64,000 bases of DNA from Mytilus edulis (taxonomy: Eukaryota), in assembly GCF_963676685.1 (NCBI RefSeq), contig NC_092344.1, forward strand, positions 66,774,001 to 66,838,000, given 5' to 3'. Below, piece by piece: positions 4,813 to 62,600 of the stretch. Position 1 is the first letter of the stretch; each line of letters opens with the position of its first letter. The position numbers were made by a program, and so were the translations under genes. The notes under the pieces are model-generated. The model had not been told where the DNA came from. It worked only from the letters and a program-made list of their open reading frames with translations, and did no database searches.

Positions 4813-6480
4813 ATGGCGACATCCTCACAAAGTTGTGGAGTTTGTGACCTCCGTCACATCACAAAACCATCAATAGTCTGGTGTACAGAATGTGACGAGG
4901 GACTCTGCAAAGAATGCCAGGAACATCATGGTTTGTCTAAAGCATCGAGAAGACATAAAGTGATTCCTATTAATGAATACCAGAAATTACCATCTGATGT
5001 ACTGAAAATTACTCAGTATTGTAGCAAACACGATGAAAAGTTTCAAATTTATTGCAAGAAGCACGAATGTCCCTGCTGCAGCAAGTGCATAGTGGAAAGC
5101 CACACAGAATGCCGGGATATTGTAAATTTAGATGACGTCATTCATAATGTCAAAACCTCCAATGCCCTCTGCGAGATAGAGGAAACATTAGTTGAAGTTG
5201 CCGAAAATCTACAAAACATTCGTCAGCATATACAGGAAAACCGGTCGAATTTGAAAGAAAAGAGAATGGAAATAGAAAAAGAAATAAAGAAGACCCGAAT
5301 AATGATCAACAACCATCTCGACAAACTACAAGAAGATTCACTGAAACAACTCTTTGAGGTCGATAAAGGAAACTCGAAAATTTGTCAACTAGTTTCATCC
5401 TTAGAGATTAAGGAAAAAGAAATAGCAGAATGCCAGAGAAATATTTCGAACATCAAGCAACATGCGACGGACCTTCAGTTGTTTCTTTCAATGAAGCAGA
5501 TAGAAAAAGACGTAAATAACAAAGATAAATTCCTACACTCGCTGGTAGAAAACGAGGGTCAACTTTCTCTTTCATTTAAGATCAATGCCTCTATCAAAAA
5601 TATCATGTCCGATATAAAAAGTTTTGGAGAAGTGCATATTGAAGCGAAACCGTACGATATTGTTCTAATCGAGAAAAAGGCTCAACAAGCCCAAACGATG
5701 ATACAAACAAGATCCATTGAAAATTTGAAACTAACGTTACACGAGACAATTAACATTCAAGGAGAATGCATAAGCGGATGTTGCATGCTGCTTGATGGTA
5801 GAATGGCCTTTACCTTCTACTATAAAAAAACAGTAAAAGTATTTAGCGACAAAGGATTACAAGACTTCGAGGTGAAGTTGCGCGTTCACCCGTGTGATAT
5901 AGTATAAATAAGTGAGGACAATACATTAGCTGTTACAACTCGTACATCAGAGTGTATTACCATTATAGACGTGGAGAGGAAACAAATCAAGAAAACCATT
6001 TCACTTGATTCGTCCAGTTATGGCATAGCACTAAAAGATAATCGATTGATTTATTCCGGTGGAGACAAAGGTATACGAATGATCAATCTCAATGACGAGT
6101 CTACAAGTGACATTGTTCGGGACAAAATGCTAACTGGCTGTTCCATTGCAACTTTTAAGGACAAATTATATCACACAAATAGTGGAAAAAATACAGTTAC
6201 GTGTTATAATCTACAAGGTCAACTACAATGGAAATTTCAAAATGAAGGCGTTCTGCAGAAACCTCAGGGTATTGATGTAGACAATGATGGCAATGTGTAC
6301 GTAGTGGGGAGTGATTCACACAACGTTGTAGTTATCTCCCCTGATGGAACACGCCATAGAGAAATAATGACAGCAAGTGATGGTCTAAAATATCCTATGT
6401 CAGTTCATTATAGTGGTTTTAAGAATCAGTTGTTAGTCGCGAACTGGAGAAACAACGCTCATTTGTTTAGTTTTATCTGA
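4813..6480 (+). pseudogene. TRIM-like B-box/coiled-coil/NHL gene, copy 1, with a premature stop
   Basis: ORFs 4813-5907 and 5971-6480 are in the same frame. TAA at 5905-5907 replaces TAC (Tyr in DIVYIS of the other copies). Otherwise colinear with the 556-aa paralogues. A polypyrimidine-AG acceptor at 4795-4802 lies just before the ATG. Confidence 0.9.
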
Positions 6481-6531
6481 AGAGTTAACAGTTCATTAGA
6501 TCATTATCTGAGATATTTCATATATAATAAC

Positions 6532-60935: not shown

Positions 60936-62600
60936 ATGGCGACATCCTCTCAAAGTTGTGGAGTTTGTGACCTCCGTCACATCACAAAACCATCTATAGT
61001 CTTGTGTACAGAATGTGACGAGGGACTCTGTACAGAATGCCAGGAACATCATGGTCTGTCTAAAGCATCCAGGAGACATAAAGTGATTCCTATCATTGAA
61101 TACCAGAAATTACCACCCGATGTTCTTAAAATTACTCAGTATTGTAGCAAACACGATGAAAAGTTTCAAATTTATTGCAAGAAACATGAATGTCCCTGCT
61201 GCAGCAAGTGCATAGTGGAAAGCCATTCAGAATGTCACGATATTGTAAATTTAGATGACGTCATTCATAATGTCAAAACCTCCAATGCCTTGTGCGAGAT
61301 AGAGGAAGTTGCAGAAAATCTACAAAAAGTTCGTCAGCATATACAAGACAATCGATCGAATTTGAAAGATAAGAGAATGGAAATAGAAAAAGAAATAAAG
61401 AAGACCCGAATAATGATCAACCACCATCTCGACAAACTACAAGAAGATTTTCTGAAACAACTCTTTGAGGTCGAAGAAAAAGATAACTCGAAAATTTGTC
61501 AATTAGTTTCATCCTTAGAGATAAAGGAAAAAGAAATAGCGGAATACCAGAGAAATGTTTCGAACATCAAGCAACATGCGACGGACCTTCAGTTCTTTCT
61601 TTCAATGAAGCAGATAGAAAAAGACGTATATAGCAAAGATAAATTCTTACACTCGCTTGTAGCAAACGAGGGGCAACTATCTCTTTCATTTAAGATCAAC
61701 GCCTCTATCAAAAATATCATGTCCGATATAAAAAGTTTTGGAGAAGTGCATATTGAAGCAAAACCGTACGATATTGTTCTAATCGAGAAAAAGGCTCAAC
61801 AAGCCCAAATGATGATACAATCAAGATCCATTGAAAATTTGAAACTAATGTTACACGAGACAATTAACATTCAAGGAGGAGGCATATACGGATGTTGCAT
61901 GCTGCTTGATGGTAGAATGGCCTTGACCTTACTCTTAGAACAGACAGTAAACGTATTTAGCGACAAAGGATTACAAGACTTCGAGGTGAAGTTGCCCGTT
62001 CACCCGTTTGATATAGTATACATAAGTGTGGACAATACATTAGCTGTTACATCTGGCGGTTCATATGAAAAGTGTATTACCATTATAGACGTGGAGAGGA
62101 AACAAATCAAGAAAACAATTTCACTTGATTCGTCCAGTTATGGCATAGCACTGAAAGATAATCGATTGATTTATTCCGCTGGAGACAAAGGAATACGAAC
62201 GATCAATCTGTACGACGAGTCTACGAGTGACATTGTTCGAGACCAAATGCCTAATGACTGTTACATTGCAACTTTTAAGGACAAAGTTTATCATACAAAT
62301 AATGGAACAAACACAGTTACGTGTTATAATCTAAAAGGTCAACTGCAGTGGACATTCCAAAAGGAAAGCGTTCTGAAGAATCCTAAGGGTATTCATGTAG
62401 ACAATGATGGCAATGTGTACGTAGTGGGGAGTAATTCACACAACGTTGTAGTTATCTCCCCTGATGGAACACGCCATAGAGAAATAATCACAGCAAGTGA
62501 TGGTCTTGGAGATCATATGTCAATTCATTATAGTGGTTTTAAGAACCAGTTGTTAGTCGCGAACTGGTGTTTCGACGCTCATTTGTTTAGTTTTATCTGA
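60936..62600 (+). CDS. RING-less TRIM-like B-box/coiled-coil/NHL protein, copy 5, 554 aa
   Basis: Intact ORF with a 12-bp in-frame deletion (TLVE) at the start of the coiled coil and a 2-aa loop insertion (TSGGSYEK). Confidence 0.93.
   Translation: MATSSQSCGVCDLRHITKPSIVLCTECDEGLCTECQEHHGLSKASRRHKVIPIIEYQKLPPDVLKITQYCSKHDEKFQIYCKKHECPCCSKCIVESHSECHDIVNLDDVIHNVKTSNALCEIEEVAENLQKVRQHIQDNRSNLKDKRMEIEKEIKKTRIMINHHLDKLQEDFLKQLFEVEEKDNSKICQLVSSLEIKEKEIAEYQRNVSNIKQHATDLQFFLSMKQIEKDVYSKDKFLHSLVANEGQLSLSFKINASIKNIMSDIKSFGEVHIEAKPYDIVLIEKKAQQAQMMIQSRSIENLKLMLHETINIQGGGIYGCCMLLDGRMALTLLLEQTVNVFSDKGLQDFEVKLPVHPFDIVYISVDNTLAVTSGGSYEKCITIIDVERKQIKKTISLDSSSYGIALKDNRLIYSAGDKGIRTINLYDESTSDIVRDQMPNDCYIATFKDKVYHTNNGTNTVTCYNLKGQLQWTFQKESVLKNPKGIHVDNDGNVYVVGSNSHNVVVISPDGTRHREIITASDGLGDHMSIHYSGFKNQLLVANWCFDAHLFSFI

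What the first reader, a model, noticed from the sequence alone, without database searches (positions are those of the whole stretch)
4813..62600. Micro-mosaic sequence exchange between paralogues, with pseudogenes carrying the donor-type patches
Seen: along the propeller, copy 3 alternates every ~30-60 bp between copy-2 and copy-1 states, including silent markers. In order: ACT ATT (2), ACC ATT..TCG TCC (1), TAC GTT CGA AAC (2), AAT GAC GAG (1), ATA GTT..AAC ATG CCA ACT GAC TGT CAC..AGT AGT GGA ATA TAC (2), then AAA CCT CAG to the stop (1), then a 3' flank of type 2. Copy 4 carries a different combination: ACA ATT..TCT TAC (2), TCC GCT GGA GAC (5), AAC GAC GAA (2), AAT AGT GGA AAA AAT (1). 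No single tree fits. Inference: short-tract gene conversion combinatorially shuffles loop cassettes, and dead copies may act as a reservoir, analogous to avian Ig or trypanosome VSG pseudogene conversion. Direction, and germline versus somatic origin, cannot be seen here.
Basis: partly seen in the sequence, partly recalled or inferred. Interest (0 to 1): 0.78.

Follow-up and report, generated by a model that had tools for sequence, protein, structure and literature searches.

The report
Mosaic mussel TRIM-like gene array
A tandem array of blue-mussel genes for B-box/coiled-coil/NHL-propeller proteins has swapped short stretches between copies, so each copy has its own mix of variable loops on one propeller face; this is the ordinary evolutionary way of diversifying a receptor-like gene family, with no sign of a programmed antibody-like system.

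Summary
The window carries five roughly 15-kb tandem units of an intronless RING-less B-box/coiled-coil/NHL-propeller gene. Source names for near-identical proteins say Mytilus edulis, "TRIM2-like". c3, c4 and c5 are intact. c1 has one nonsense codon. c2 has a 1-bp deletion and a 927-bp repeat insert.

Relationships change along the gene, and each segment's tree is rejected by the other segments (AU p 0.033 to 1e-12). My own versions of PHI and Sawyer's test are significant (p 0.0002-0.0005), also for intact copies alone. With nine copies they also hold at silent sites.

c3 and c4 differ by 0.8% over 4 kb of downstream flank but by about 10% in a 400-bp island. In that island 40 of 47 differences are states shared with a third copy. 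Variation sits in alternate propeller loops, which means one face.

Best reading: germline ectopic gene conversion plus diversifying selection. The 30-60 bp rhythm is mostly the spacing of the variable loops. No single micro-tract is significant alone, and some switches may be recurrent mutation.

A pseudogene "reservoir" like avian Ig or VSG is not supported. Whole-gene read validation was not possible. I found no earlier scan note or paper on this.

The parts
4813..6480 (+). c1: gene copy with one premature stop (TAA at 5905-5907; the others have TAC) and an in-frame 3-bp deletion. Its 5' part is about 6% diverged from the other copies. Its 3' end, 6214-6506, is identical to c3 27927-28219.
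13597..16194 (+). c2: dead copy. It has a 1-bp deletion in the coiled-coil part and a 927-bp repeat insert at 14609-15535. Its 5' half is about 10% diverged from all copies except L032. After the insert it is c3-like, and 15815-15970 is identical to c3 27814-27969. The end of its coding sequence is diverged again (29 differences in 257 bp).
14609..15535 (+). Repeat-element insert that splits c2. Other copies of its 3' part lie in the window, for example 4045-4420 at 98%.
   Evidence: no Pfam family for its ORF
26523..28193 (+). c3: intact copy, 556 aa. B-boxes at residues 8-50 and 68-106, a long helix at 117-247, and a six-bladed NHL-type propeller at about 305-556.
27430..27936 (+). Divergence island in c3 (blades 1-4 of the propeller). 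It is about 10% different from c4, against 0.8% in the downstream flank. It has 69 sites where two or more states are each shared by two or more copies. c3 has only 1 private state here.
27927..28219 (+). Homogenised tract. c3 is identical here to c1, and it has 0-4 differences from c4, L002 and L005 in the 3' coding segment 27937-28193. It ends just past the stop codon, where the flank types split (28223 onward).
41718..43388 (+). c4: intact copy, 556 aa, with its own combination of loop versions.
60936..62600 (+). c5: intact copy, 554 aa. Its island resembles L009, a copy outside the window. Downstream of 27979 (c3 coordinates) it sides with c4 rather than L009.

Best explanation
These are germline paralogues of a RING-less TRIM-like gene (two B-boxes, coiled coil, six-bladed NHL propeller). 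They stand in a tandem array of about 14 loci on one Mytilus edulis chromosome.

Ectopic recombination between misaligned copies keeps moving sequence among them, mostly non-reciprocal gene conversion with tracts from tens to several hundred bases. In most of the 15-kb unit this homogenises the copies to about 1-3% difference. In the first four propeller blades each copy keeps a different assortment of old, shared variants, at about 6-12% difference.

Replacement changes are concentrated in alternate loops, which lie on one face of the propeller. Selection for different binding faces therefore most likely preserves and sorts the exchanged patches. Dead copies take part because they are still homologous, not because they are a dedicated store.

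Shown: the mosaic, its significance, the island, the shared pool of states, the loop pattern. Inferred: conversion rather than crossover as the main route, selection as the cause of the island, a recognition function.
For: Discordant ancestry:
- c1 differs from the others by 56-64 sites in the 5' half but by 0-3 from c3, c4, L002 and L005 in the last 257 bp.
- L009 differs by 12-27 sites from the copies other than c1 and c2 in the 5' half, and by 36-46 from all copies in the 3' end.
- AU tests reject the other segments' trees (p 0.033 to 1.3e-12).

Recombination tests:
- PHI p 0.0005. Sawyer SSCF p 0.0002.
- Silent sites only, nine copies: PHI p 0.0036 and SSCF p 0.0002 over the coding sequence; 0.015 and 0.032 in the island.
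- Simulation without recombination: 0 of 300 reach the observed incompatibility in the island part.

The island:
- c3 versus c4 is 39/400 differences at 27430-27829, 33/4146 downstream and 21/999 in the 5' coding part.
- dS is raised in the island as well as dN (pS 0.14 against 0.077). Selection on protein alone cannot do that.
- 40 of 47 c3-c4 island differences have both states present in a third copy.

Loops and selection:
- Variable residues are 40 of 60 in odd-numbered loops and 10 of 46 in even ones (Fisher 5e-6).
- Silent polymorphism is equal in odd loops and framework (0.32 and 0.33 per synonymous site). Replacement polymorphism is 0.465 against 0.133 per site.

Independent material:
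- c3-diagnostic contigs without mismatch occur in runs X1 and X6.
- Two proteins of another M. edulis assembly carry further loop combinations.
- Eighteen copies of the sister cluster on contig C7 also give PHI p 0.001.
Against: - No read or contig spans a whole gene. The public material was Logan contigs with at most 259 nt lying on the stretch, so the linkage of c3's loops on one molecule rests on the assembly alone.
- With only the five window copies, silent propeller sites give no signal.
- Single micro-tracts are not individually significant.
- Rmin is a weak discriminator: 11 of 300 no-recombination simulations reach the observed 17.
- Some switches may be recurrent mutation. For example, the T at 27806 is shared only by c1 and c3 and lies at a CpG in the other copies. 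The four variable sites within 27769-27777 occur in six combinations.
- Within the 5' and 3' segments taken alone the simulation test is weak (6 of 300 and 16 of 300).
- The tests are my own scripts, not GENECONV, RDP or GARD.
- Selection was judged from crude polymorphism ratios, not a codon model.
Confidence: 0.8

Rival explanations
1. Assembly or polishing chimeras: reads from near-identical copies were mixed when the consensus was made, which would create false mosaics.
For: The copies are 90-99% alike and tandem, the setting in which short-read polishing can swap states. No whole-gene read could be examined. L002's frameshift could itself be an indel error.
Against: - The island is more diverged than its surroundings, not less. 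Mis-polishing tends to homogenise.
- c3-specific 71- and 93-nt stretches occur with 0 mismatches in two unrelated runs, while the other eight copies differ there by 4 or more.
- The c2/c3-type loop versions occur without mismatch in X1 and X3.
- Another assembly's proteins are mosaics too.
- The C7 cluster gives the same signal.
- The frames of c3, c4 and c5 are intact.
Confidence: 0.05
2. No exchange at all: recurrent mutation at a few hypervariable or CpG sites, sorted by selection, imitates a mosaic.
For: The fitted rate heterogeneity is strong (alpha 0.19), and simulations without recombination already give Rmin about 10. Six combinations occur at four sites within 9 bp at 27769-27777. The T at 27806 lies at a CpG. 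Replacement changes pile up in loops.
Against: - Incompatibility depends on distance.
- The signal persists at silent sites with nine copies.
- 0 of 300 simulations reach the observed incompatibility.
- Identical tracts of 150-760 bp lie between otherwise diverged copies.
- The segment trees reject one another.
Confidence: 0.05
3. Unequal crossing-over and birth-and-death turnover only: hybrid genes made by single reciprocal crossovers, with no short conversion tracts.
For: - The large blocks fit this. c2's 5' half is of another type than its 3' half, and the change lies at the insert.
- c1-to-c2 and L002-to-L032 spacings are similar (8.8 and 9.3 kb), which suggests larger duplicated units.
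- The array varies in unit length.
Against: Patches of tens of bases are flanked on both sides by another ancestry. Rmin is 9 in 403 bp among only five copies. Each switch would need its own crossover and a change in copy number.
Confidence: 0.07
4. Programmed or somatic diversification templated by pseudogenes, as in avian Ig genes or trypanosome VSG.
For: Dead copies share long identical tracts with intact ones. Loop versions YYVRNKG, NMPTDCH and SSGIYT occur only in c2 (dead) and c3 (intact) among the 53 loci and 130 proteins held.
Against: - There is no single acceptor: 6 of 14 loci are open.
- The pseudogenes are young and full-length rather than promoterless cassettes (c1 has one nonsense codon).
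- c1 looks overwritten rather than a donor.
- c3-specific sequence recurs in other animals' runs, so it is inherited.
- One assembly cannot show somatic change.
Confidence: 0.03

Closest known systems
Fish TRIM multigene subsets (finTRIM/ftr, btr, hltr) and primate TRIM5alpha
   Same: These are large, partly tandem TRIM-type families whose C-terminal ligand-binding domain has hypervariable loops under positive selection. For zebrafish btr, GARD found seven recombination breakpoints inside that domain (PMC3137616, abstract and passages read).
   Different: The variable domain there is B30.2/SPRY; here it is an NHL propeller. Those proteins have a RING; these do not. Here the exchange is dense enough to reassort single loops, and it forms a sharp 400-bp island in otherwise near-identical 15-kb units.
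Sequence exchange in plant NLR (R-gene) clusters, MHC and KIR genes
   Same: Interlocus gene conversion and unequal crossing-over between tandem paralogues create mosaic recognition surfaces. Diversifying selection acts on solvent-exposed residues. Pseudogenes take part. (Recalled; no paper read here.)
   Different: The fold, the organism and the cell compartment all differ. No pathogen ligand is known here.
Class VII TRIM-NHL proteins (TRIM2, TRIM3, TRIM71/LIN-41, Brat, Thin, Mei-P26)
   Same: The predicted propeller matches their solved NHL domains (Foldseek TM 0.75-0.77 normalised by target). They share B-box and coiled coil. NCBI names the mussel proteins 'TRIM2-like' and 'wech-like'.
   Different: There is no RING and no filamin domain. 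Sequence identity to the solved NHL domains is 12-17%. The known ones are conserved single-copy regulators, some of which bind RNA on the top face. These genes are a hypervariable, intronless tandem array.
Avian Ig pseudogene conversion and trypanosome VSG mosaics
   Same: Short templated patches from homologous copies, some of them dead, build new combinations in a binding surface.
   Different: Those systems are programmed, directional and act on one expressed site, somatically or clonally. None of these features was found here, and the first was tested and not met.

Membership tests
TRIM (RBCC) proteins, NHL class | N-terminal RING finger | tested here: not met
   Pfam finds B-box families only at residues 8-50 and 68-106, and no RING.
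TRIM (RBCC) proteins, NHL class | B-box zinc finger(s) followed by a coiled coil | tested here: met
   PF00643 E 7e-9 above its cut-off. PF22586 scored 23.2 bits, below its cut-off of 27. One long helix at 117-247 in the model.
TRIM (RBCC) proteins, NHL class | C-terminal six-bladed NHL beta-propeller | tested here: met
   24 strands in the model, with pLDDT above 90. The best solved matches are the TRIM2, TRIM3, Thin and Brat NHL domains, TM 0.75-0.77. Pfam NHL is just under its cut-off (19.7 against 20 bits).
Interlocus (ectopic) gene conversion between tandem paralogues | Ancestry changes along the alignment; no single tree fits | tested here: met
   (AU p 0.033 to 1.3e-12).
Interlocus (ectopic) gene conversion between tandem paralogues | Identical tracts longer than site shuffling gives; incompatibility rises with distance | tested here: met
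Interlocus (ectopic) gene conversion between tandem paralogues | Signal present at silent sites | tested here: met
   Nine copies: PHI p 0.0036, SSCF p 0.0002. Five copies, propeller only: not significant.
Interlocus (ectopic) gene conversion between tandem paralogues | Non-reciprocal patches without exchange of flanks | tested here: inconclusive
   Short patches lie inside another ancestry. No single one is significant alone, and reciprocity cannot be seen in one haplotype.
Interlocus (ectopic) gene conversion between tandem paralogues | Copies verified by reads that span them | tested here: inconclusive
   Only short contigs were available. Local c3-specific stretches were confirmed in X1 and X6, but whole-gene linkage was not.
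Programmed pseudogene-templated diversification (avian Ig, VSG) | One expressed acceptor with an array of silent donors | tested here: not met
   3 of 5 window copies and 6 of 14 cluster loci have full open frames.
Programmed pseudogene-templated diversification (avian Ig, VSG) | Transfer directed from pseudogene to gene | tested here: inconclusive
   Direction is not readable. c1's 3' coding end has no private state and looks overwritten.
Programmed pseudogene-templated diversification (avian Ig, VSG) | New combinations arise somatically or clonally | not testable with these tools
   This needs long-read amplicons from gametes and haemocytes of single animals.

The most novel reading that the evidence does not exclude
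The array is a germline cassette-shuffling system for cytosolic recognition proteins. Very short ectopic conversions, anchored in the framework sequence between loops, reassort about ten loop versions on one NHL-propeller face. They act among roughly 14 tandem copies, dead ones included. Together with copy-number variation this would give each mussel its own repertoire. It would be a molluscan counterpart of plant NLR or fish finTRIM diversity, possibly with locally raised recombination in the island.
Probability: 0.2. Interest if true: 0.75.

Novelty: new member of a known kind. Interest (0 to 1): 0.45.

Why it matters
Mussels are known for unusual resistance to disease and for large gene presence/absence variation. 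How their expanded receptor-like families gain diversity is less well worked out.

This array is a clean case. The 15-kb units are almost identical, yet they hold a 400-bp island of old, reshuffled variation on one face of an NHL propeller. That fold is otherwise known from conserved regulators, some of which bind RNA. The array is therefore a candidate cytosolic sensor family, and the loops to test for ligand binding can be named.

It also warns annotators. Trees, dN/dS estimates and orthology calls for this family will mislead unless recombination is modelled.

Tried and rejected
- Downstream-flank mosaic test on c1-c4: only 12 informative sites survived the gap filter (10 c1c2|c3c4, 2 c1c4|c2c3; runs test p 0.18). 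It is uninformative apart from showing that c2, c3 and c4 are nearly identical there.
- First C7 analysis: invalid, because loci on both strands were mixed. Repeated correctly. One of the 19 loci (L021, partial) was dropped.
- First loop table: I copied the secondary-structure string with two extra characters, which shifted the loops. Redone from the tool's element list. Only one search is used.
- Rmin as a count of events: rejected as a measure, since simulations without recombination give about 10.
- Direction of transfer and the 'reservoir' idea: considered, not resolvable.
- Literature: searches, and term look-ups in PMC7653742, PMC10514466 and PMC4346834, found no account of gene conversion in bivalve B-box/NHL genes. 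Supplements are closed, so lists of variable gene families in those papers' additional files could not be checked.
- Earlier-findings look-ups by words gave nothing relevant.
- The nine 10-kb stretches fetched (L045-L053) went into no alignment or test. They were only scanned for loop motifs, with all other held loci.
- GENECONV, RDP, GARD, 3SEQ and PAML are not installed. PHI, Sawyer's SSCF/MCF, the runs tests, the four-gamete counts and the Nei-Gojobori counts are my own scripts.
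Full report
WHAT IS IN THE WINDOW

The window is G000:C1:66774001-66838000 of a 1.37-Gb assembly. It holds five tandem units of about 9-19 kb, each with one intronless gene on the + strand:
- c1, 4813-6480
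- c2, about 13597-16194
- c3, 26523-28193
- c4, 41718-43388
- c5, 60936-62600

c3 and c4 encode 556 aa and c5 encodes 554 aa, all in open frames. c1 has one premature stop (TAA at 5905-5907 where the others have TAC) and an in-frame 3-bp deletion. c2 has a 1-bp deletion and a 927-bp insert at 14609-15535. The insert is a repeat with other copies in the window.

Pfam finds B-box families at residues 8-50 and 68-106, weak NHL and propeller families, and no RING. An AlphaFold2 model built on 72 family members has a long helix at 117-247 and 24 strands at 308-555, with pLDDT above 90 there. Its best solved matches are the NHL domains of TRIM2, TRIM3, Thin and Brat (TM 0.75-0.77 by target). Near-identical database proteins are named by NCBI 'tripartite motif-containing protein 2-like' and 'protein wech-like' of Mytilus edulis.

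THE WIDER ARRAY

DNA searches of the same genome with the 3' and 5' halves found 14 loci between C1:66.686 and 66.908 Mb, and about 30 more-distant ones (73-80%) on contig C7. Of the 14 C1 loci, six have a full open frame: L009, L006, c3, c4, c5 and L005. The other eight are broken or partial:
- c1 and c2, as above
- L002, frameshifted
- L032, a second c2-type 5' half only
- L010, L011 and L041
- a fragment at 66691844

I aligned nine copies, c1-c5 plus L002, L005, L006 and L009.

Differences by segment show that ancestry changes along the gene:
- c1 differs from the other copies by 56-64 sites in the first 1011 bp (113 from c2). In the last 257 bp it differs by 0-3 from c3, c4, L002 and L005.
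- L009 differs by 12-27 sites from the copies other than c1 and c2 in the 5' half, and by 36-46 from all copies in the last 257 bp.
- c2 is about 10% from everything in the 5' half. It is only 12 sites from c3 in 27534-27936, then 29 sites from c3 in the last 257 bp.

Maximum-likelihood trees of the three segments reject one another (AU p 0.033 and 2.5e-7 on the 5' data, 1.7e-6 and 5.9e-4 on the middle, 1.3e-12 and 4.0e-10 on the 3' end).

My PHI implementation gives p 0.0005, the floor of 2000 shuffles, for the five window copies, the nine copies and the six intact copies over the coding sequence. For the five copies' 5' half alone it gives p 0.066. Sawyer's sum of squared condensed fragments gives p 0.0002 gene-wide. 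Within 27534-27936 it gives 0.0014 for five copies and 0.0002 for nine.

Long identical tracts between otherwise diverged copies:
- c1-c3, 27927-28219
- c2-c3, 27814-27969
- L005-L009, 26534-27296
- c3-c4, 28025-28253

HOW FINE IS THE MOSAIC

Among biallelic informative sites of the nine copies, all four gametes occur as follows:

| Distance between sites | Pairs with all four gametes |
|---|---|
| 5 bp or less | 5 of 61 |
| 6-15 bp | 14 of 90 |
| 16-30 bp | 52 of 132 |
| 31-60 bp | 87 of 239 |
| beyond 100 bp | roughly half |

Linkage is therefore largely lost between neighbouring loops.

Cautions:
- Rmin (9 in 403 bp for five copies, 17 for nine) is not a count of events. Simulations on the fitted tree without recombination (GTR+G, alpha 0.19) give Rmin 10.3 +/- 3.1, and 11 of 300 reach 17.
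- The number of incompatible pairs is a better measure. Observed is 433 of 990; simulated mean is 109 and maximum 277, so 0 of 300 reach the observed value.
- The same test inside the 5' and 3' segments alone is weak (6 and 16 of 300).
- No single tract inside the island survives correction for 36 pairs (best p 0.004).
- With silent sites only the signal holds for nine copies (coding sequence PHI 0.0036, SSCF 0.0002; island 0.015 and 0.032). It does not hold for the five window copies in the propeller (8 informative sites, PHI 0.95).
- Some switches may be recurrent mutation. The T at 27806 is shared only by c1 and c3 and lies at a CpG in the others. Four sites within 27769-27777 occur in six combinations.

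AN ISLAND OF OLD, SHARED VARIATION

c3 and c4 differ as follows:

| Region of c3 | Differences from c4 |
|---|---|
| Downstream, 28030-32193 | 33 of 4146 (0.8%) |
| 5' coding part | 21 of 999 |
| Upstream | 58 of 1171 |
| Island, 27430-27829 | 39 of 400 |

c2 against c3 shows the converse island at 27935-28334. Synonymous divergence is raised in the middle part as well (mean pS 0.14 against 0.077 in the 5' half; pN/pS 0.57 against 0.31). Faster protein evolution alone cannot explain the island.

Of 47 c3-c4 differences in 27430-27936, 40 have both states present in a third copy. c3 has one private state there. The island has 69 sites with two or more states each in two or more copies, against 28 in the 907-bp 5' part. 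The copies draw on a common pool of variants.

WHERE THE VARIATION LIES IN THE PROTEIN

I numbered the 23 loops between the 24 modelled strands. Odd loops have 40 variable residues of 60 and even loops 10 of 46 (Fisher p 5e-6). In a beta-meander consecutive loops alternate between the two faces, so this puts the variation on one face.

In codons 308-471 silent polymorphism is the same in odd loops and framework (0.32 and 0.33 per synonymous site). Replacement polymorphism is 0.465 against 0.133 per site. This is a crude sign of diversifying selection on the loops.

The variable loops are 30-60 bp apart.

INDEPENDENT MATERIAL

No run held the whole stretch (best share of words 0.65), and all runs were kept as Logan contigs. 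I laid X1, X6, X3 and X19 on 27350-28350 at 97% likeness. They gave 63, 23, 10 and 7 contigs. Of these 103, 31 pieces were listed and no piece spanned the stretch.
- Two listed contigs match c3 without mismatch where all eight other copies differ by 4 or more: X1 at 27441-27511 and X6 at 27418-27510.
- The c2/c3-type loops 11, 13 and 15 occur without mismatch in X3 (27744-27804) and X1 (27813-27885, 27862-27931).
- A 154-nt contig of the long-read RNA run X19 joins c3-type loop 9 to G at 27774 and C at 27806. None of the nine copies has that combination.
- Contigs end where paralogues converge, so they cannot link loops more than about 31 nt apart. Whole-gene linkage stayed unchecked.

Two proteins of another M. 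edulis assembly (P0002, P0127) carry loop sets that match different copies loop by loop. They also have 4 and 3 of 10 loop versions seen in none of the nine copies. Eighteen C7 copies also give PHI p 0.001.

PSEUDOGENES

Both dead window copies share long identical tracts with intact ones. Three loop versions (YYVRNKG, NMPTDCH, SSGIYT) occur only in c2 and c3 among the 53 loci and 130 proteins held. Direction cannot be read.

c1 has 28 private states in 907 bp of its 5' part and none in the 257-bp 3' coding segment, which it shares with four other copies. One overwrite of c1 is simpler than four donations. c2's relatives in its upstream and 5' sequence (L034, L041) have 3' halves only 75-81% like c2's, so c2's c3-like part was probably acquired.

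With six of 14 loci open there is no single acceptor. The analogy with avian Ig or VSG is not supported. The fairest description is that dead copies still take part in the exchange.

COMPARISON AND NOVELTY

Interlocus conversion that diversifies the binding surface of tandem recognition genes is well known; plant NLR clusters, MHC and KIR are recalled examples. For zebrafish btr TRIM genes, positive selection on hypervariable B30.2 loops and seven GARD breakpoints are reported (PMC3137616, abstract and passages read). Four full-text searches and term look-ups in three papers found nothing on bivalve B-box/NHL genes. Supplements were closed.

I file it as a new member of a known kind. It is a tidy, well-supported case with an NHL propeller as the variable domain, of moderate interest.

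Noticed in passing
window 49907-55121 (- strand): A BEL/Pao-type LTR retrotransposon with two long open frames. The 771-aa one has DUF1759 and an aspartic protease. The 943-aa one has RT, Pao peptidase, integrase zinc finger and DUF5641. It lies between c4 and c5 and accounts for the longer unit there.
   Followed up: partly
window 39116-39802 (- strand): A 228-aa open frame with cysteine/histidine-rich and coiled-coil-like parts in the spacer between c3 and c4. No Pfam family.
   Followed up: partly
L032 (G000:C1:66864194-66868138), locus 45-2445: A second c2-type 5' half, 96% identical to c2 with its upstream region. It stops matching about 50 bp before the point where c2 carries its insert, and it is not followed by that insert. 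So both copies of this diverged type are broken near the start of the island.
   Followed up: partly
P0124 (NCBI model over L002 and L032): An 824-aa RefSeq model named 'structural maintenance of chromosomes protein 2-like'. It reads from the frameshifted copy L002 into the next c2-type half-copy, so it is probably an annotation artefact.
   Followed up: no
one search hit list: Among the best 120 of 392 hits, every protein at 90% identity or more to c3 is from M. edulis. The next best are 75% or less, from M. coruscus, M. californianus, M. galloprovincialis and M. trossulus. The C1 subfamily may be young, fast-turning or variably present.
   Followed up: no
G000:C7:60.0-61.5 Mb (L012-L030): A sister cluster of about 30 copies on both strands, 73-98% alike among themselves. 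Of the 19 loci looked at, 11 have an open frame of about full length (548-565 aa). It also shows a recombination signal.
   Followed up: partly
window 24830-26030 versus 40220-41420: The region upstream of c3 and c4 is about 5% diverged, while 4 kb downstream is 0.8% diverged. The units are not uniformly homogenised outside the gene either.
   Followed up: no
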